Source: Oikopleura dioica
Lineage: Eukaryota > Animalia > Chordata
Reading direction: 5' to 3'
NCBI GenBank assembly: GCA_907165135.1
Contig: OU015570.1
Span: forward strand, 1,488,001-1,552,000
Length of the DNA stretch: 64,000 nt
Below the pieces are notes generated by a model. The model saw only the letters and a program-made list of their open reading frames with translations, did no database searches and had not been told where the DNA came from. Every line of letters starts with the position of its first letter. Position 1 is the first letter of the stretch. Made by a program: the position numbers and the translations under genes. Below, piece after piece: positions 54,067-63,624 of this stretch.

Positions 54067-56335
54067 TATATTTTTTATTATTTATAGGAATTATTGAGTA
54101 AAAAGTGATTTTCTTAAATGAATCTGGAACGAAAATGAAAAAAATAAAAGAATATCCAATCGTGAGCTTGTTGAATTCTAACAAAGAAATACAGTGTATT
54201 TACTTGTAGCATCACATTGCGTTAACACGAAATTGTCGCCATCGCAATGCTTTGTTTTAATTAAACAGTCGGATTCCCCTACGGTTCTCAAGGTAGACTA
54301 CGCGATGATGGACGAACTGAGCCAAGGGGCGCCGTCACCAAGTAAGACACTTTACTTAAGTAAAGTAAGATGTTTAATTCGAAACTCAAGAATCCTCGAC
54401 TCTGGTTGCGAATCTGTTCTGGCGATGCTGTGGAGTGTGACTGACATGGATATCGATCGGTTCACCCTTCGACTTTATGCAGATTGGTTTTCCGGCGTAC
54501 GCAACTCTTCCAAAGAGCCTGGACCCTGTATATCGCGATACATAAACGAAGCCGCTCGAGGTTTGCATTATTCTGGATAAACAGGAGCTATAACGGGTTT
54601 TTCTAGCGTGTAAACTTGGAGCTGCAAATGCTGGTGCATGCGTAAATTACGGACTCATTCCTGCTTGTTACAATATTCCAGAGAATTGGGACCGCGGACT
54701 GCCTGCCAAAATCAATTACAAGTAGTCTTTTAGAAAGACTCGTTTCAGCTTTTATATTGTAGTATTAACCTACAGTGAAAACCCATTTTAGGGCCGATTT
54801 TCGGATGACAGCGAATTTCAAAAGTGGCCTTCAATTGGATATTTTTCCCTCGAGTCGGATGACAACAAATTTTCATTCTTGGGATAAAAAATGATGAATG
54901 AGGGTTTTAGGGTTATCGCATATTTCTTTTGCTCAAAGAAAGTATAAATCATGGAATTTTTCCAAATGTGTCCTTTGATTTGAATTCAAGGTGATTCTTT
55001 TTTTCATTATCTCAAAAAAAATATTCGAAAAGCACGTCTGAAAAAAGATAAACATGACAAATGCTAAGAAAAAAGATATGAAAAGATTCTAGTGAAGACG
55101 TCAAAGAATAGTGACGTGAAAGTGACAATTACTGAGCTCTTTCGATAAAAAATGGTCTGTAAATTCGTCTGCGTGTTTATACACGCCTATATAATGATAG
55201 ATTTGAACTCTTGGACTCAAATCTAAGTGAAAATTTAAAAAGGATCGAAAGAAATCATCGTGAATTAAAATAATCGAGAAAAAATCATCAAAGTGTACCG
55301 ATGATTTTTGATGATTGCCCCGAAAACTAAAGCCCGAATTAGCGACACCAAGCGAGCAATTTTCTCCTTCTTTTTTGCCTGGAGGACCCCTCTTACTGAA
55401 AGAATTTAAAAATGAAAGAAGAATTATCTTTTCCGAGGAATTCTTCGATTAACTGAGTTCTGGTCACGTAAACAAAATCGTTTCGAGAAAAAAAATCACG
55501 TGCAACTTTGGTAGAACTCGGAGGACCACACCTGGTGGAAGATTTTGATAGAAGAAGACATTGTCTTCTTGGGGAATCATTTTCACAAACTATATTTTTG
55601 CTGCAAGGAAACATTAATTTTTCCTTTATTTTTATCATGTGACATCTTGGAGGACCCCGGAGGACCAACTTGATGGAAGAACACTTTGTAAAAAGAAAAA
55701 ATAATTAGTATTTCAAAAACCATAATTTTCATTCGGGAAGAATAAACTGAAGTTAATTAAAAGATGGGTGTGGGTGGGGTTGGGGACAGAACTGAGACTG
55801 ATCATCTCTATCCTATCTTCTAATCCCAGCCTTAGTCAAGCCCATTAAAATTTAAAAGCCAGGGAAGGGGTTCGACCAGTGTTTGAAAAAAGAATGTGCG
55901 CGGGCTGCGAGCGGGCGAGCGGGGCGCGGGCGGGCGCGCTCGTCCATCCGACCACCTGAAAATTTGACAAATTTTGCCCGCGCCCATCCGCCCATCAAAA
56001 AATCAAGCCTCATACTGCTCGCACGCGCACGTACCGCTCGTGCTCCCCGCTCGCCCGCCCTCCCCTCCCATGCTCGCCCCTCGCCCATGAGTGGATGTGA
56101 GCGGACCGGGTATTATCAAGGAAAACGGACTCATTTTACACAGAATGAGGACTTATTTTACCTAGAACGAGGACTTTTTTTACATAGGACGAGGACTTAT
56201 TTTACATAGAACGAAGACTCTTTTAGATAGAGCAAAAAATTAAATTTCTGAGTATTTTTGATGCTCTTTTATTAATACAGTCAGGCTGATTTCAATTCAC
56301 TGATTTTGTGAATTGAAGAAAATGTACAGGAAGAA

Positions 56336-59013
56336 TCAAAGCACCTGATCTTCGACATTCGTGTTCTTGGCATTTGTTTGAAGAATCTTCAAGCAGACCT
56401 TTTTAAACTCGGCGGCAGTGACATATTGTCTGAGTTTTTTCGTCGTGACGATTTTGATTCGATTTCTTTTTGGATTCGCAGTGTATCCTGAGAGAGACGA
56501 AAACTCTCTCTCAATCTCACTTGAGGAGAGTGGGCACGACAGAACCTAAAATAAGAAAGTAAAAAAATGTTTAACTCGGATAAAATTACTTTTGTTGCCA
56601 CTTTGGCAAGCCGAGGAAATCGTGAGATGATTCCTGGATCGGTCCAAAAATTTCTCATTGAGATCGAGGCAAAATGCATGTGTTCTTCTGTGACTTTTCC
56701 TTCAGAAGGGCGATAAAAATCATCGCGAGAGACGGTTGTTTGGTATTTTTTGATTTCTTTTTCGATACCTTATTACATATTGGTACTTGAAAGGGAAAAA
56801 TTTGTTACCTTGAGTGATATCAAGTTCATTCGCTTCTTCAACGATGTCAAAGTCATCGACATGGTTTGCTCGCTGACTATCTCGAAGGAGAGGTTCATTT
56901 TGCGAGTCATCAGGCTCCATGAGTTTGTAAAGTTCTTCGCAGGCACTGACAGCGTGTCTTTCCCATTTGAGAACGGCTTTTGCAATATTTTTTCCGTTCT
57001 CTTTGTAGAAGACATCTTGAGAGGACAGCAAATGGTTTACAAGATTCGAGAAGCGAACCTTTTTGCATGGAGGATAAAGTAAATTTGCAACAAGATTCGC
57101 TTCAGTTGATCGACAAGGATCATTGCGAGAGAACTTCTCCCCGTTTTTGACGAATGATTCGAAGAACATGTTCGATATTTTGCTGAATGCCGCCTTGGAA
57201 AGTTTTGCCATATGAGCCTAGAGAAGGTTTCTGTTTGAGATCATCTCATTTTTTTTACCTTTGTGTCAGCGTCTGTAATTCCTTCTGTCATGGTGGAGAG
57301 TTTAATCATGAGCCGCTCAAGAAGTGGAAATCCATCAGGGAGTGCTGCGCTTGTAGATTCACAGGCGCGAATGAACTCAAGAAGAAGCGTTGCAACTCTC
57401 GCGAAGCTTTCAACATAACCCCAGGATGGCAGCTCACAGCCGTCGAGAAGGTAGTGGAATTTGTGGTCGGGTTTCGAGAGTTCGATAAGTTTTTCTTTCC
57501 AAAAATAGACGACTTTGTACTGCTCGCTCAGCAAATTCCATCTTATTCCGTTTGTGCTCTGAATAAGAATCAAAAAGCGTCTCTATGAAAAAACTAACCG
57601 GTATAAGTGGAAAGGTCTCTCGATTGGACTTTGGATCGAGCTCGCGCCATTTTTTCTTATCAGAGTCGGTCATCGTTTCCTTCCAAAAGAAATCTCTCAA
57701 GGATCTGGGAGCTTCCGGAGAAAGCTTCAATCGTCGTGCTGCTTCCGGAGTCAGCCTTTTCTTTTGAAAAAGCAGAAAATTAGCGAAGGACTCGTGAGTT
57801 GTCGGTTCCATTCCAAAGAACTCTTCGCTATATTCTTGAAGTTGTTGTCCAGCTCTGTTGAATCTGAAAATCGATATAGTATTTTTAATAAAAATGGATA
57901 AAAATTACGTGTGAGCGTAGCAAATAACTCCAAGATGTGAGATAGTAGAAACGACACAATCTTCGGCAGCATCCGCTACGAACGGAATCAGGGACACTTT
58001 GTGCTCAGGAACACCAATCTTCAGAAGAGCTTCGCTTTAAAAAGTTTTTAAGAGTCATAACTTCTCGATAAAACCTACGTTGTCATGTCGATCAAGACAT
58101 CGGAACTCTGACTCTCTGTTGGATCATATCCAACTAGGTAGCTCTTTCGCTTCCGAGTGTCTGGATCTGTCGCCGACAACAATGTTCCATGCGCTTTATC
58201 CTCGAAATCTGAGGTTTTTTGTCCGAGATGTTTATCATCAGTTTCAGCGGAAACATGATTTGTTTCCAGGAGCTCTGAAATATATTAAAACCTTTTCGAT
58301 TCTTTAAACTTCAACCTGGGATGTGTTCACGAAGAAACTGTTCCATTTCCTCTGATGATTTTTCGTATTCCTTTTTCGCGTAGTAAGCAGACGGTACGAG
58401 GCTATTGAATGATTCTTTAGAGGTGGCGCCCGCTTCAGATCCCTTCTCATAATAGAATTGGAGAAGTTCCTTTAGTGATTCACTAAATAACCAGTTTTTA
58501 AGAGAATTTTTAAAAGCCTTATCACCTCTCCAAGAATTTGATTGGAACTTGACATTTCGCTCCGACTTTAGCGAAATGCTTCGCAGCTTCGATCTTCTCC
58601 GATTTGTCGTGAAGTTTAGGTCGCTTCACAAAGTTAGCGATTCCAAGCTGTCCTGGAGTTACTCTCCGTCGCTCATCCCTTCGTTCCGGATTATGACATG
58701 AGTTTATATGTCGAACGACTTTAAATTTTGTTCGAATTTAAAAATAACTAGAATAAAACGTACCATTATAAAGCTTGAGGCTTTTCGATTCTGGGTACCA
58801 AGCTAGAATGGGCGCGTTGTCTGATGAGCAGGGGCCAGAGCAGACAATTTGCCCATTCCATTGTTCTTCTTGGATTACTTTCTTGAATTCCAGATGACTT
58901 TGCCAGTGCTTTACTTCTGTTATATCAGTAATGATTGCATCAAGATCCGGATAGGCACCCGGTGGGATGAGTTCGAGGCGATCATTCGGCGACAATTTTC
59001 TCTTTTTTGACAT
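56336..59013 (-). CDS. hAT transposase, 10 exons, 764 aa (predicted splice model)
   Basis: Exons 59013-58764, 58718-58526, 58482-58316, 58274-58079, 58034-57909, 57863-57599, 57558-57259, 57217-56809, 56768-56590, 56545-56336 (2295 nt, phase-consistent, all GT-AG). BED-type finger (CSGPC...NVVRHINSCH), FVADAA, CYAH, IRWN, FPRLAKVATKVLSCPLSSSEIEREFS..RNR. Confidence 0.9.
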
Positions 59014-59431
59014 TTATTTCTCTTTCAACAAATTGATGTGAATCGGACAATCAGAATCGAAATAATGAGAAAAAGTCTTTTTGCTCATTCGAAAATATCG
59101 CATCTAGAGAAAACTTTTCTCTTATTCTCGAAAAGAGAAAAAACTCGCTTGTTTATTTCTTCATTTTCTATGTAAAAAGAGGCCCTTTTCAGTGTAAAAT
59201 AAGTCCCATTTCTGTGTAAAATAAGTCCCTTTTCTGTGTAAAATAAGTCCTTTTTCTATGTAAAATATGTCCCTTTTCTGTGTAAAATAAGTCCTCAGTC
59301 TATGTAAATTACGTCCCAAGCACTTTCTCTTCGACTAAAAGTTTTTTCCAGATTTGATTATCATTTCGAGAATTGAAGTAGTCACTTTGACAAGATCAGA
59401 GAAATCAGACGTCAGAAGAAGACAAGAGAAA

Positions 59432-60148
59432 ATGCCCCGCGCTGACAAAAAAGTCCGAATTCAATGGTAAAATTTTCACGAAAAAAAAGTGATAATAACT
59501 ATTTTCAGCGGCGTAGGAAGCTGCGGAAAAAAGCTCCTGAGAGGCTCATTTGATCGACATTTCAAAGAAACGCACAAAGACTTGGACTACAAAAAGAGAA
59601 ACGACTACATCAAGTTTCAGCTTGAAAAGATTCCACGCACTCTTATTGGCTACCGATCCGTAAAATTGGACGAAAAAGATTTCTTTAGCTCTAAAATCAT
59701 GAAATTGTTTAAAGGTAATTTTTGTCATCTTTTCATTTAAATCAAAGCTTGAATCTAGACGGAAGCAGCAAACAGATAAAACTGCGCCAGATCAAAAAAG
59801 AAGAGAACAAAAAGCTTTTGAGAAAATACATCTTCTCCGCACGAAAAAGAGCTTTTGCTCGAAAAGATCGACAAAAGCTTCGTACCTACAATATATTCGC
59901 ACATCGCTATTTCTATGAGGAACAATTGTATATTGATCCCATTTACGAAAAAGAGGATGGTTTTGAATGGTTATTCATATTTTACTTGCATTTATAAAAC
60001 AATTTTTAGTGAGCTATTCACCGGCGATTGCAACGAAGACAAAATCAACGAGTGCCGACAATGCGAAAAAAGCGTCTGTTTGAATTGCTGGAAGAAGTCT
60101 TGTGCGCCAAATTTTACCTGTCCATTTTGCCGAAATCCCCATTTCTAA
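59432..60148 (+). CDS. Passenger gene inside hAT: C2H2-type finger + RING-like Cys domain, 4 exons, 196 aa (predicted splice model)
   Basis: Exons 59432-59466, 59509-59714, 59759-59969, 60010-60148 (591 nt, GT-AG introns of 42, 44 and 40 nt). CGVGSC-x11-HFKETH; CELFTGDC-x7-CRQC-x4-CLNC-x10-CPFCR. Confidence 0.8.
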
Positions 60149-61118
60149 AGATAAAATTTTTAATTGATAAATAAATACAGCGAAAAACTGAAAAAAACGA
60201 TTTCTATGGTAAGAATTAACCGCCCCGGGAGGGTGAGCGGGCGGGCGCGGGAGGGTGCCCGCGCACATCCGCCCATCCAAAAATCTGGCCTTTGCGTGCC
60301 CGCTCCCATCCGCCCTTCCAAAAAAATGGACCCTTCGCGCCCGCGCTCGTCCGACCATCCGATTCTCAGGCTTTTTTCAAACACTGGGTTCGACGCGGGC
60401 GGCGTGAGTTCGAGTCCCGCTACAGCATCATTCTTACCCATTCAGGCTCAAGTTATTTTGAAATTTTATCTAAGGTTTTAGAATTTCTACCTTCGACAAG
60501 CTTTAGATTTTTTGCGCAGATTCTTAAGAATTAAGAATAATTTCTTATTTATTCAATTTATTGTTTATTAAGTTTTTTTAATTTTTTTTATATTCAAGTT
60601 TAATTTTTATGACATCTTTCATATTATTACGTAATAACACCACCACTCAGACAAAACACCCCCATTTATCATTACTTTAATTGAGTGTGCTCTGAAGCAA
60701 AAGTAAGAAAGAGGTGAGGACTTTTTAGGCTAGCACAAGAGCACCCGCGTGCGGCAAAGGGCAGGTATCCATATATGGATACCTCGATTTTTTCGGGGCA
60801 ATGCATTGAAATCATCGGTACCAAAAAAGAGAATTAAAAAGTATCACTCTTTACGAACTCTAGATAAAACACAAGACATCCCGCAGTCGAAAAATAGGGG
60901 CTGAGAGGACCCGGAATCAGCAGCCCCGGGCGACCTTAATTCGTCAAACTCGTCAGACTCGTCAGACTCGTCAATTTCGTCAAACAAAGGGTCCAAAATT
61001 ATTTAAAAAAAAGAATTCGTCAAACTCGTCAGACTTGTTTTGATATATATTGATTCTAGAAATCTTTCCCTGAGTTCAATAAACAATCGGAGTTTTCTAC
61101 CACTTCACCCGCGCTTAA

Positions 61119-61539
61119 CCCTTTGCGTGACGATCAGAACTACCCCTATGCGTGACGCGGGTGCATTCAGTGCACCCGGCCCATCTAGAACATTTTTTCG
61201 CTCTTTTTTGCCATTTTCGAAGAAAACCAGCCCAAATTCGCTGTTGTTATTGTCTCCGAAACCGGGATACCCCCTTCTTCGGCGGCGAAAGGGGCTCAAA
61301 GTTACGTAACTTGCATCAAAATAGCTGTTCTCGAGACGAAAAATAGCAAAATTACGACATTTTTTACGTTTTGAGCTTACTAGAGAAGATTTTTTCAAAA
61401 TGTTACGATGCAGGTTGGACGTGTTTCTTGACGGTGATTCTTATTCTTTTTAAATTTTTGAATTCAGGCGAAAATTGATAGAGAAATGGACAAAGAACCT
61501 TGAGCGGGTGCACTAAGTGCACCCGCGTCACGCATAGGG
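61119..61539. mobile_element. piggyBac-type MITE
   Basis: TTAA|CCCTTTGCGTGACG...CGTCACGCATAGGG|TTAA; inverted copy of 37785-38202. Confidence 0.85.
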
Positions 61540-61838
61540 TTAATCAATGAATTTCATTGAATGAAAGACGTTCAGAGAAAAGCTTTATTTGTAAAACATA
61601 CTTGATGATTATTCAATGATTTTTGTTGTTACTTTGACCGAAAAAATTGCCGATACCTATGTACACTATGTATACTACGTATACTAAACAATAGTATAGA
61701 AAATCGAAATTCGAAGAAATGTCTTCAAGATCTACTTTAATGAGCCTGCTGAATATATCTTTCCTGGACATAACATTGATCTCTTTTTTTTAGAAAAATT
61801 ATCAATATCAGCATCAAAATAACAACACTGTCACGAAA

Positions 61839-63099
61839 GGTGTTTCCTTACACCGACCATATCCTTACACCGACCAAATCCTTACACCGACCAAAATCCT
61901 TACACCGACCATTTTCAGAGTTTGGTCGATGTAAGGAATTGGTCGGTGTAAGAATTTGGTCGGTGTAAGGAAATCCGTAACGAAATATTTTCTCAGACAT
62001 AAAATGAGAGAGTGGTCGCAGAGAACTTATTAGTCGACCCCCCACTGAGCAAAATTTTTCGGAAATTTTTTTTTTCTCTTTTGATGATGGAAAGTTGGAG
62101 GCATTACATAATTATATTATTAAATAATTGAAGGCAATAAAGCGGATCTGATGTCCAAAAATCGAAATAATTCTGAAAATGGCTGTTCAGCCAAAAACTC
62201 TCGCGGCCACCTTACAAAAATTTTTGCAACGTCCCCGCCCTACACCGGTTGTAGGTGGTCATGTGGGTACCGGTACCCCTGTTCGCTCACTGTCTTGAAT
62301 GTGGGTACCAGTACCCACGATAGTTCTCTTCACTGAGCGTGGGTACCGGTACCCACGGTCACTTTTGTTGGCTAACGTGGGTACCCTTTTTCGTCAATAT
62401 ATTTTCTAGAAAGAAAAATCATGATTGTGTTTATACCGATAGAAGGCTTTTCCCCATTTAAAATCGGTCGTAGAGAAAGAATCTCATATCAAAAACGGTT
62501 TAAGCGACAGATGAACAAAAACAAATGGAGGAGTGTCCGCTCCGCGGATGGATTATAAGAAAACTCATGCCTTGGTCAAGCCACATTTTTGCAGTTTTCT
62601 CATTTCTAGAGCTGATTTATTTTCGAAAAGCTTGGTACCCACGTTAGCCGAGAATGCTGAACGTGGGTACCGGTACCCACGTTCGAAGAGAGAGTCGAAT
62701 GTGGGTATGGTACCCACATGACCGCATACCACCCCTACACCCTCACAAAGATGCTCTAAATGCGGAGGTTTGAGTCTTGAAACGGCCTTTTTCAGCATTA
62801 TTGCGATTTTCGGTCTTCAGACCCGCCTTAAATAAATTACCCCAACTCTCCATAATAAATAGAAAAAAAAATTCTCCGAAAATTTCCGCTTGGTGGGGGT
62901 CGACTAAAAACTTTTTCTGTGACCACTCTTTCAGTTTTCGTCTTTGAAAATATTTTGTCGCAAATTTCCTTACACCGACCAAATCCTTACACCGACCAAA
63001 ATCCTTACACCGACCATTTTCAGAATTGGGTCGGTGTAAGGAATTGGTCGGTGTAAGGATTTGGTCGGTGTAAGGATATGGTCGGTGTAAGGAAACACC
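61839..63099. mobile_element. Mutator-type non-autonomous element (9-bp TSD)
   Basis: GTCACGAAA|GGTGTTTCCTTACACCGACC...GGTCGGTGTAAGGAAACACC|GTCACGAAA; subterminal CCTTACACCGACC arrays at both ends. Confidence 0.85.
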
Positions 63100-63624
63100 G
63101 TCACGAAATTCTAAAAACCTGAATTCGTCAAACTCGTTAGACTTGTCAAATGATCTGACGAGTCTGACGAGTTTGACGAATTTAGGCTCAACCGAATAAT
63201 ATAAGTTTTTTCAAGTGACATTGCAACTTTCAGATATTGAATAGAAGTTGAAAGAAAGTGGCCTTAAAATGGATTTTTGTGGATGACAGATTTTGGTGAT
63301 TTTCCGAAAAAGTGGCCTTAAAAGGGCCGGCCTTAAAATGGGTTCTCACTGTAGTTATCCAGGCAACTTCTGTAGTAGCTTTATTGTTCAGTTAATGTTT
63401 TCTAATGCTTTTCAATTTTAATTTAAGTCCGATATCGCTCGGAACTATCATTCTAAACTCCCAACTTCTTCATTCTTCTCTGTTCTCTCTAACACTCACT
63501 GTACTTGGCCACATTCCTTTATTTACTGTACTGCCGAACATGCACGAAATTTTCAATATATTATATATACTTGCCTCAAAAATTGATTCTTTTTCATCCA
63601 CAGAATGTGATTTAAAACAAGAAA

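What the first reader, a model, noticed from the sequence alone, without database searches (positions are those of the whole stretch)
59432..60148. Two-gene hAT: a divergent spliced passenger encoding C2H2 + RING-like fingers
Seen: within the TIRs, 418 bp from the transposase ATG and head-to-head with it, a four-exon ORF whose splicing creates two of the ligand cysteines (TG|C and TG|T), which supports the model. Established: hAT elements usually encode only a transposase; C-x2-C...CPxCR ends are typical of RING E3 ligases; accessory anti-silencing genes are known in other superfamilies (VANC in Mutator-like VANDAL elements). Inference: a nucleic-acid-binding ubiquitin ligase that could counter host silencing or control transposase turnover.
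Basis: partly seen in the sequence, partly recalled or inferred. Interest (0 to 1): 0.8.

Follow-up and report, generated by a model that had tools for sequence, protein, structure and literature searches.

The report
hAT transposon with zinc-finger/RING-like gene
A cut-and-paste (hAT) transposon of the tunicate Oikopleura dioica carries, next to its transposase, an intact second gene for a small zinc-finger protein with a RING-derived end; the gene recurs in related transposon families, which is unusual for hAT elements, but its ubiquitin-ligase or anti-silencing role is untested.

Summary
A 4,510-bp hAT element (55877-60386) has 16-bp inverted ends, an 8-bp target duplication (GGTTCGAC) and an intact multi-exon transposase on the minus strand. 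418 bp from the transposase ATG and head-to-head with it lies a four-exon gene of 196 codons (59432-60148).

Both cysteines created by splicing are confirmed by relatives. Cys12 is contiguous in two other element families of this genome. The second (TG|T) is contiguous in family C, and a cDNA-like marine contig of a close relative has the homologous intron spliced out.

The gene is not a captured host fragment. Every homologue in the genome lies inside a hAT element: families B and C, with seven transposase-bearing copies that each carry the gene downstream. It is better conserved between families A and B than their transposases are.

The N-terminal finger is C2H2-like. The C-terminal eight-cysteine domain is RING-derived: profile searches hit almost only RING fingers, and relatives keep the canonical C-x-H. 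Its first zinc knuckle is aberrant, no Pfam cut-off is reached, and AlphaFold models were unusable.

Ligase activity, DNA binding and anti-silencing are inference. The scan had already noted this gene on other DNA of this genome (families B/C); this window adds a third, divergent, head-to-head family.

The parts
55869..55876 (.). left copy of the 8-bp target-site duplication GGTTCGAC
   Evidence: read; identical to 60387-60394
55877..55892 (+). left terminal inverted repeat CAGTGTTTGAAAAAAG
   Evidence: pair I17, 100% complementary to 60371-60386
55900..56110 (.). left G+C-rich subterminal region with ~40-bp repeats, shared with the right end
   Evidence: families D2, D4, D5; retained in the MITE-like derivatives
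56127..56231 (-). left array of the 22-bp repeat (4.8 copies), inverted relative to 59164-59317
   Evidence: (D3, I1-I9); retained in the MITE-like derivatives
56336..59013 (-). hAT transposase gene, multi-exon with ~45-nt introns, no internal stops in the exon path; BED-like C..C/H-x4-H at the N-terminus, CYAHT motif, C-terminal dimerisation motif
   Evidence: open stretches, sequence; last exon 56339-56545 hits PF05699 at E=0.0015, 18.7 bits, profile columns 41-75 only
59164..59317 (+). array of six to seven 22-bp repeats (unit TTTTCTGTGTAAAATAAGTCCC) between the two divergent start codons
   Evidence: (D1); unit is 16/21 identical to the 21-bp repeat of family B
59432..59466 (+). passenger exon 1 (MPRADKKVRIQ + TG of Cys12)
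   Evidence: the N-terminus aligns with MPRKKEEFPIC-C of family C and Cys12 of B
59509..59714 (+). passenger exon 2: rest of the C2H2-like finger (C-x4-C-x11-H-x4-H) and a basic stretch
59759..59969 (+). passenger exon 3: basic middle region, the best conserved part (41% identical to family B, E=2e-13)
60010..60148 (+). passenger exon 4: RING-derived Cys-rich domain ending CPFCRNPHF, then stop
60220..60370 (.). right G+C-rich subterminal region (41-bp repeats)
   Evidence: (D2, D4, D5); the right-hand 187 bp are retained in the MITE-like derivatives
60371..60386 (-). right terminal inverted repeat
   Evidence: pair I17
60387..60394 (.). right copy of the target-site duplication GGTTCGAC
   Evidence: read

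Best explanation
The stretch is an intact, spliced accessory gene of a hAT transposon in Oikopleura dioica.

The gene encodes a 196-aa protein with three parts: an N-terminal C2H2-type zinc finger, a basic middle region, and a C-terminal eight-cysteine domain derived from a RING finger. It belongs to the element, not the host. It is shared by at least three element families of this genome (A in this window, plus B and C) and by relatives in a sister lineage. It always lies just inside the right end and reads outward.

The most likely mechanism is inferred, not shown. The finger and basic region bind repeated motifs of the element itself, namely the 21/22-bp repeat arrays that families A and B share. 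The RING-derived domain recruits a partner there: either an E2 enzyme (ubiquitin ligase) or the transposase or a host factor (plain zinc scaffold). By this route it would regulate transposition or expression of the element.

My odds:
- real, selected, element-borne accessory gene: about 0.85
- DNA-binding adaptor acting on the element's own repeats: about 0.5
- catalytically competent E3 ligase: about 0.35
- anti-silencing factor: about 0.1
For: The hAT hallmarks and an intact transposase are present. The four exons have GT..AG introns of 40-44 nt and no stops.

Homologues of every exon are found only inside hAT elements. Family B is L040:2993-9065, with TIR CAGGGTGTCAAATCGCG.., TSD GTGTTAGC and PF05699 at E=2.9e-9. 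Family C is L063:1494-7431 plus an inverted twin. All seven B/C-like transposase copies have the passenger finger about 1 kb downstream.

All zinc ligands are conserved at 27-55% amino-acid identity, while the DNA is unalignable. Intron positions differ between families: the TG|T intron is present in A and B and absent in C, as expected of an old gene under selection.

Between A and B, tblastx finds the passenger and the 22-bp repeats but not the transposase.

The homologous intron is removed in the cDNA-like contig L070 and retained in L068. L070 is cDNA because its 451-aa host ORF is split into six pieces in this genome.

RING derivation: the profile of six family members hits 55 PDB sequences at E<=1. 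All but the last-but-one and weakest (a thyroid hormone receptor, E=0.99) are RING-type. RNF4 scores 2.7e-7, Pirh2 4.4e-4, and RING1B is matched over the whole domain. The relative P0002 has the canonical C-G-H and hits nine Pfam RING models at E of 1e-4 to 0.16. ESM-Atlas neighbours with a family are all in the RING clan.

The aliphatic residue two positions after the first Cys (L/I), an E2-contact position in RINGs, is kept in all four lineages.
Against: No RNA data exist for this copy. Only one full copy of family A is in the genome. Its MITE-like derivatives (at least 6, 91-95% identical) lack both genes, so the gene is not needed in cis.

No Pfam model reaches its cut-off on any passenger exon of A, B or C. 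The first RING knuckle is C-x6-C instead of C-x2-C, followed by a short 7-8-residue loop. The Pro after Cys7 and the Arg after Cys8 are lost in family C, and the Pro also in the marine relatives.

Both AlphaFold models have pLDDT about 50, and the Foldseek hits, though all RING, have E>=1.

The big HMMER search found one credible relative among 1.84 billion representatives, so the family is narrow and the alignment shallow. DNA binding to the repeats is pure inference. The BED-like fingers of the two transposases share a V-x-R-H-I motif and could equally explain the shared repeats.
Confidence: 0.6

Rival explanations
1. The RING-derived end is a non-catalytic zinc scaffold. The protein is a Harbinger-type helper that binds the element ends and the transposase (recruitment, nuclear import or complex assembly) and involves no ubiquitin.
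For: The first zinc knuckle is aberrant, and the Pro and Arg that canonical RING E3s use for E2 contact and activation are not conserved in family C. No Pfam RING cut-off is reached. The repeat motif is shared between families whose passengers are similar but whose transposases are barely alignable.
Against: All eight ligands and the aliphatic E2-contact position after Cys1 are conserved. A, B and the marine relatives keep the Arg after Cys8. Profile hits are to active E3 RINGs.
Confidence: 0.35
2. It is an anti-silencing factor like VANC of VANDAL elements, or a ligase that destroys a host silencing protein. In either case it protects its own family from repression.
For: Families B and C share TIRs and 86-91% identical transposase DNA, yet their passenger region has no blastn similarity (40-49% amino-acid identity over the matched exons). 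Such family-specific diversification is seen in arms-race genes. Its position behind a repeat array suggests element-specific targeting.
Against: The whole 1.5-kb module, including introns and flanks, is unalignable. This fits module exchange between element lineages better than fast protein evolution. There is no similarity to VANC or any known anti-silencing protein, and no data on silencing in this animal were examined.
Confidence: 0.1
3. It is a passively carried, captured host gene fragment (Pack-TE-like cargo) or a decaying pseudogene with no role for the element.
For: Only one full copy of family A exists. One rearranged fragment elsewhere (C4:5670896-5671224) is decayed, with CPFC changed to SPFW. 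The non-autonomous derivatives spread without the gene.
Against: No host paralogue was found with any exon at E<=10; all hits lie in hAT elements. ORFs are intact, and ligands are conserved across three families and a sister lineage at 27-55% identity with intron turnover. Co-occurrence with B/C-like transposases is 7 of 7.
Confidence: 0.05

Closest known systems
RING finger E3 ligases (C3HC4 / C4C4 types, e.g. RNF4, Pirh2/RCHY1, RING1B, CNOT4)
   Same: Ligands 3 to 8 are in register (C-x2-C or C-x-H, then x3-4, C-x2-C, x10, C-P-x-C-R). An aliphatic residue lies two positions after Cys1. Profile hits are almost only RINGs, and relatives keep C-G-H.
   Different: The first knuckle is C-x6-C and the first loop has only 7-8 residues. 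The domain is all-Cys in A, B and C. It is below every Pfam cut-off. The Pro and Arg are not universal. Fold and activity are unproven.
Two-gene DNA transposons: PIF/Harbinger (transposase + Myb-like DNA-binding protein), MuDR/VANDAL (mudrB; VANC), CACTA (TnpA + TnpD)
   Same: A cut-and-paste element carries a conserved second gene with a predicted DNA-binding module, absent from the non-autonomous derivatives. (This comparison is from established knowledge, not tested here.)
   Different: The superfamily differs (hAT, normally single-gene), and so does the protein (C2H2 finger plus RING-derived domain). There is no sequence similarity to any of those helpers. The orientation relative to the transposase differs between families: head-to-head in A, tandem in B and C.
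RAG1 N-terminal zinc dimerisation domain (RING + C2H2 finger attached to a transposase-derived recombinase)
   Same: A RING-type module and a C2H2 finger are combined and associated with a hairpin-forming DDE recombinase. (Resemblance recalled from memory; a lead only.)
   Different: Here they are encoded by a separate gene, in the opposite order (finger first). RAG1 did not appear among the PDB profile hits at E<=1.
Same accessory gene in families B and C of this genome
   Same: Same three-part protein, same position just inside the right end, same ligand pattern.
   Different: Family A has different TIRs and a transposase barely alignable with B/C. Its arrangement is head-to-head behind a 22-bp array rather than tandem behind a 30-bp CCAAT array. 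Its finger is C-x4-C split by an intron.

Membership tests
hAT superfamily (the element) | 8-bp target-site duplication | tested here: met
   GGTTCGAC lies at 55869-55876 and 60387-60394. Families B and C also have 8-bp TSDs.
hAT superfamily (the element) | short terminal inverted repeats | tested here: met
   16 bp, 100% complementary, starting CAGTG (I17).
hAT superfamily (the element) | transposase with the hAT C-terminal dimerisation domain (PF05699) | tested here: inconclusive
   The last exon alone gives E=0.0015 and 18.7 bits against a cut-off of 21.4. It covers profile columns 41-75 only, because the domain is split by an intron. A is not among the genome-wide hits at E<=0.01. Families B/C score 37-39 bits, over the cut-off. 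The CxAHT motif was read by eye.
RING finger | eight zinc ligands spaced C-x2-C-x9-39-C-x1-3-H/C-x2-3-C-x2-C-x4-48-C-x2-C | tested here: not met
   Ligands 3-8 fit approximately (C-x2-C-x4-C-x2-C-x10-C-x2-C in A; C-x-H-x2-C-x2-C in the marine relatives). Ligands 1-2 are C-x6-C followed by only 7-8 residues.
RING finger | significant match to a curated RING model (Pfam gathering score) | tested here: not met
   A, B and C: no RING family at E<=1 (A has one at E=1.4). Relative P0002: nine RING families at E of 1e-4 to 0.16, the best 20.3 bits against a cut-off of 21.
RING finger | homology to solved RING domains by profile | tested here: met
   55 PDB sequences at E<=1. All but the last-but-one and weakest (a thyroid hormone receptor, E=0.99) are RING-type. 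RNF4 scores 2.7e-7 as a tandem and 4.4e-4 as a single domain; Pirh2 scores 4.4e-4.
RING finger | cross-brace fold binding two zinc ions | tested here: inconclusive
   AlphaFold2 gave pLDDT 50.5 and 49.8. The second model shows a beta-hairpin followed by a helix, as in RINGs. Foldseek top hits are all RING but with E>=1.
RING finger | E2 binding and ubiquitin-ligase activity | not testable with these tools
   Only residue conservation could be read. The L/I after Cys1 is kept in all lineages. Pro after Cys7 is present only in A and B (the marine relatives have Met). Arg after Cys8 is present in A, B and the marine relatives. Family C has lost both.
Classical C2H2 zinc finger | C-x2-4-C-x12-H-x3-5-H with a match to known fingers | tested here: inconclusive
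   A has C-x4-C-x11-H-x4-H; B and C have C-x2-C-x12-H-x4-H. The profile hits a CTCF finger at E=0.0037. There is no Pfam hit.
Element-borne accessory gene (as opposed to captured host fragment) | co-occurrence with the transposase across copies and families, and no host paralogue | tested here: met
   7 of 7 B/C-like transposase copies carry it, and family A carries it. All genome hits of every exon lie in hAT elements. Three other hAT loci on C3 show no passenger hit.

The most novel reading that the evidence does not exclude
A clade of hAT transposons in larvaceans has evolved its own DNA-targeted RING-type ubiquitin ligase as an exchangeable module. The module acts at the element, for example to clear the transposase or host chromatin or repair factors from the hairpin-ended break. 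This could adapt cut-and-paste transposition to an animal that, by published accounts recalled from memory and not checked here, lacks classical end-joining. Alternatively the ligase destroys a host silencing factor. It would be the first catalytic accessory protein of a hAT element, and a free-standing parallel to the RING plus C2H2 module of RAG1.
Probability: 0.12. Interest if true: 0.85.

Novelty: new variant of a known kind. Interest (0 to 1): 0.62.

Why it matters
hAT elements are textbook single-gene transposons. A conserved, spliced second gene that is exchanged as a module between element families shows that they can acquire helper proteins, as Harbinger, Mutator and CACTA elements did.

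The protein combines a DNA-type finger with a RING-derived domain. It therefore offers a directly testable link between transposition and ubiquitin signalling in a chordate with an extremely compact, fast-evolving genome.

If the helper proves necessary for, or stimulates, mobility, it would also matter for using these elements as genetic tools in Oikopleura.

Tried and rejected
- I first read the genome as nematode-like because of the ttttcag acceptors and 40-45-nt introns. I dropped this after earlier scan notes named Oikopleura. The assembly statistics match OKI2018_I69: 64.3 Mb, 19 scaffolds, longest 17.1 Mb.
- Pfam on every passenger exon of A, B and C gave nothing significant.
- A word-based protein search with the family B first-exon stretch found nothing.
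- The big HMMER search with the C-terminal profile gave only P0002, plus a repeat protein (P0001) that I regard as spurious.
It worked with A plus P0002.
- Two AlphaFold runs were unusable, and Foldseek on the second was not significant.
- A PDB profile search with the middle region found nothing meaningful.
- PDB searches with two transposase exons of A found nothing useful.
- dN/dS among the three family B copies was abandoned, because there are only 4 exon substitutions.
- A tRNA-like insertion site was suspected from the flank, but ARAGORN finds none.
- The literature searches found no description of a hAT accessory RING or zinc-finger gene.

Full report
**1. What is there**

The window is G000:C3:1488001-1552000 of a 64,281,565-base, 19-contig genome. 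Its size, scaffold number, longest scaffold (17.09 Mb) and the 16.16-Mb contig C5 (published scaffold N50 16.2 Mb) match the Oikopleura dioica OKI2018_I69 assembly described in PMC8008620. Earlier notes of this scan gave that lead. It replaced my first guess of a nematode.

The element has these features:
- It is bounded by a perfect 16-bp inverted repeat (CAGTGTTTGAAAAAAG, 55877-55892 and 60371-60386).
- It is flanked by the direct 8-bp duplication GGTTCGAC. It is 4,510 bp long.
- Inside each end lies a G+C-rich region with ~40-bp repeats, then an array of a 22-bp repeat (56127-56231 and, inverted, 59164-59317).
- The minus strand carries a multi-exon transposase from the ATG at 59013 to the stop at 56336. 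I traced its exon path through ~45-nt GT..AG introns without stops.
- The transposase has a C..C/H-x4-H finger at the N-terminus and the CxAHT motif typical of hAT transposases.
- Its last exon matches the hAT dimerisation domain PF05699 at E=0.0015. This is below the cut-off because only half of the domain lies in that exon.

**2. The passenger gene**

The gene starts 418 bp from the transposase ATG on the other strand. It has four exons: 59432-59466, 59509-59714, 59759-59969 and 60010-60148. The introns are 42, 44 and 40 nt, and the reading frame is 196 codons.

The first junction (TG|C) makes Cys12 and completes C-x4-C-x11-H-x4-H. The third junction (TG|T) makes Cys151, the first of eight cysteines: C-x6-C-x7-C-x2-C-x4-C-x2-C-x10-C-x2-C, ending CPFCR.

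Every search used single exons by reference, and the joined step was left out.

**3. Copies in the genome**

Family A has a single full copy. It also has at least six MITE-like derivatives, 91-95% identical. These keep the left 312 bp, the 22-bp repeats and the right 187 bp, but neither gene. One decayed fragment at C4:5670896-5671224 has the left TIR fused to the 3' part of the passenger, with CPFC broken.

Protein-level searches with exons 3 and 4 found two further families.
- Family B (L040:2993-9065, 6,073 bp) has the TIR CAGGGTGTCAAATCGCG.. and the TSD GTGTTAGC. Further copies lie on C1.
- Family C (L063:1494-7431) has an inverted twin 8.8 kb away.

Both are bona fide hAT elements (PF05699 at 37-39 bits). 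Both carry a homologue of the passenger just inside the right end, reading outward as in A, but in tandem with the transposase rather than head-to-head.

Genome-wide, all seven B/C-like dimerisation-domain hits have a passenger finger about 1 kb downstream. No exon of the passenger hits anything outside hAT elements at E<=10. Three other hAT loci on C3 show no passenger.

**4. Support for the splice model and for selection**

- Cys12 lies at the same distance from the start Met in B and C, where it is encoded without an intron. A and C even share the MPR start.
- The TG|T split recurs at the same place in B.
- In C the intron lies 19 codons upstream, and the cysteine is read straight through (..YEC-PLMTDNC..).
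- All four finger ligands and all eight C-terminal cysteines are conserved at 27-55% identity, although the DNA is unalignable.

Outside this genome, a HMMER search of 1.84 billion representatives gave one credible relative, P0002. A metagenome scan gave four JGI contigs.

Contig L070 carries a 451-aa uninterrupted host ORF that is split into six pieces at 69-94% identity in this genome. It is therefore cDNA from a close relative. It lacks exactly the 40-nt GT..AG intron that contig L068 retains, which produces TG|C, a Cys, at the homologous position. The homologous intron is thus spliced in vivo in a sister lineage. I have no RNA evidence for the window's own copy.

**5. Modular history**

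B and C share TIRs and 86-91% identical DNA over the transposase and the 30-bp repeat array, and 89% over the last 110 bp. The 1.5 kb holding the passenger has no blastn similarity, and the proteins are 40-49% identical over the matched exons.

Conversely, A and B have transposases that tblastx does not connect and blastp links only through short motifs. Their passengers are 41-55% identical over the aligned parts of exons 3 and 4, and their 21/22-bp repeat units match at 16 of 21 positions.

Simple co-divergence cannot give this pattern. The passenger behaves as a module exchanged between element lineages. Because introns and flanks are also unalignable, exchange fits better than fast protein evolution alone.

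**6. What the protein is**

N-terminus: a profile of the three finger exons hits a classical C2H2 finger of CTCF (E=0.0037). Pfam is silent.

Middle: this basic region is the best conserved part and has no known relative.

C-terminus: the evidence for a RING origin is as follows.
- Pfam gives nothing significant for A, B or C.
- The marine relatives have the canonical C-G-H in place of C-x2-C. They hit nine Pfam RING models at E of 1e-4 to 0.16, just under the cut-offs and only over the last three quarters of the models.
- A six-sequence profile hits 55 PDB sequences at E<=1. All but the last-but-one and weakest (a thyroid hormone receptor, E=0.99) are RING-type. These include RNF4 (2.7e-7), Pirh2 (4.4e-4), RING1B, TRAF6, COP1 and TRIMs.
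- Several of these alignments place the family's first Cys on RING Cys1.
- ESM-Atlas neighbours with a family are all in the RING clan (a lead only).

The domain is therefore RING-derived, but its first knuckle is C-x6-C with a short loop.

Of the residues RING E3s use for the E2, the aliphatic residue after Cys1 is kept everywhere. The Pro after Cys7 is present only in A and B, and the Arg after Cys8 in A, B and the marine relatives; both are lost in C.

Two AlphaFold runs gave pLDDT about 50. Foldseek on the second lists only RINGs, at E>=1. The fold question stays open.

**7. How it most likely works (inference)**

I take the protein to be an element-specific adaptor. The finger and basic region bind repeats of the element. 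The RING-derived domain brings in an E2 or another partner. The effect is on transposition or on expression of the element.

My odds are given under Best explanation. The main rival is a non-catalytic helper of the Harbinger Myb-like type. Anti-silencing in the VANC manner is possible but unsupported. Passive cargo is largely excluded.

**8. Novelty**

Searches of the held literature found no description of a hAT accessory gene of this kind, nor any account of hAT elements in Oikopleura beyond passing mention.

Multi-gene DNA transposons are known in other superfamilies, so I class this as a new variant of a known kind.

The scan had already noted the same gene on other DNA of this genome, in families B/C (s1-534459, s1-534445, s1-534406, s1-371387). 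Those notes differed on the RING question. My tests support RING ancestry but not ligase function.

This window adds four things:
- a third, strongly diverged family with a head-to-head layout;
- confirmation of both junction cysteines;
- cDNA evidence for splicing of the homologous intron;
- the evidence for module exchange.

Noticed in passing
L063:1494-7431 and its twin (G000:C4:376493-382430 and C4:391232-397170): Two 99.98% identical family C elements lie in inverted orientation 8.8 kb apart, with swapped target duplications (TGCTCCAG / AACAGGGA on one, the complements on the other). This is the pattern expected if recombination between the two copies inverted the segment between them.
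   Followed up: partly
window 60934-63186: A nest of at least four concentric inverted-repeat structures sits just downstream of the element. The outer arms are CGTCAAACTCGTCAGAC repeats. Inside them is a 56-nt perfect pair of CCTTACACCGACC repeats, then a GTCGACCCCCCAC pair, then GGTACCGGTACCCAC palindromes. It looks like MITEs or foldback elements inserted into one another.
   Followed up: partly
L066, L068, L070 (JGI contigs Ga0314674_10145816, Ga0314710_10011699, Ga0314681_10018663): About 1-kb non-autonomous relatives with G+C-rich inverted ends carry a chimeric ORF. The ORF joins a transposase-like N-terminus (MSQKRKFD.., as in family B) to the RING-like end of the passenger. In L068 and L070 they sit downstream of different host ORFs on cDNA-like contigs, so they are transcribed by read-through, with the intron either kept or spliced out.
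   Followed up: partly
L040:7014-7446 (family B) and L063:5905-6140 (family C): A 30-bp repeat containing CCAAT, 14.5 copies in B, lies directly upstream of the passenger gene in families B and C. Family A has instead a 22-bp repeat array between its two divergent genes.
   Followed up: partly
G000:C1:630000-642000 and C1:726000-738000: Two regions about 96 kb apart each hold two tandem B/C-like two-gene elements with near-identical hits. This suggests a large segmental duplication containing the elements.
   Followed up: no
L002 (G000:C4:5669407-5672640): The decayed family A fragment sits at the centre of a long, nearly perfect palindrome of host-like sequence. The arms run several hundred bases on each side and include a coding-like stretch.
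   Followed up: no
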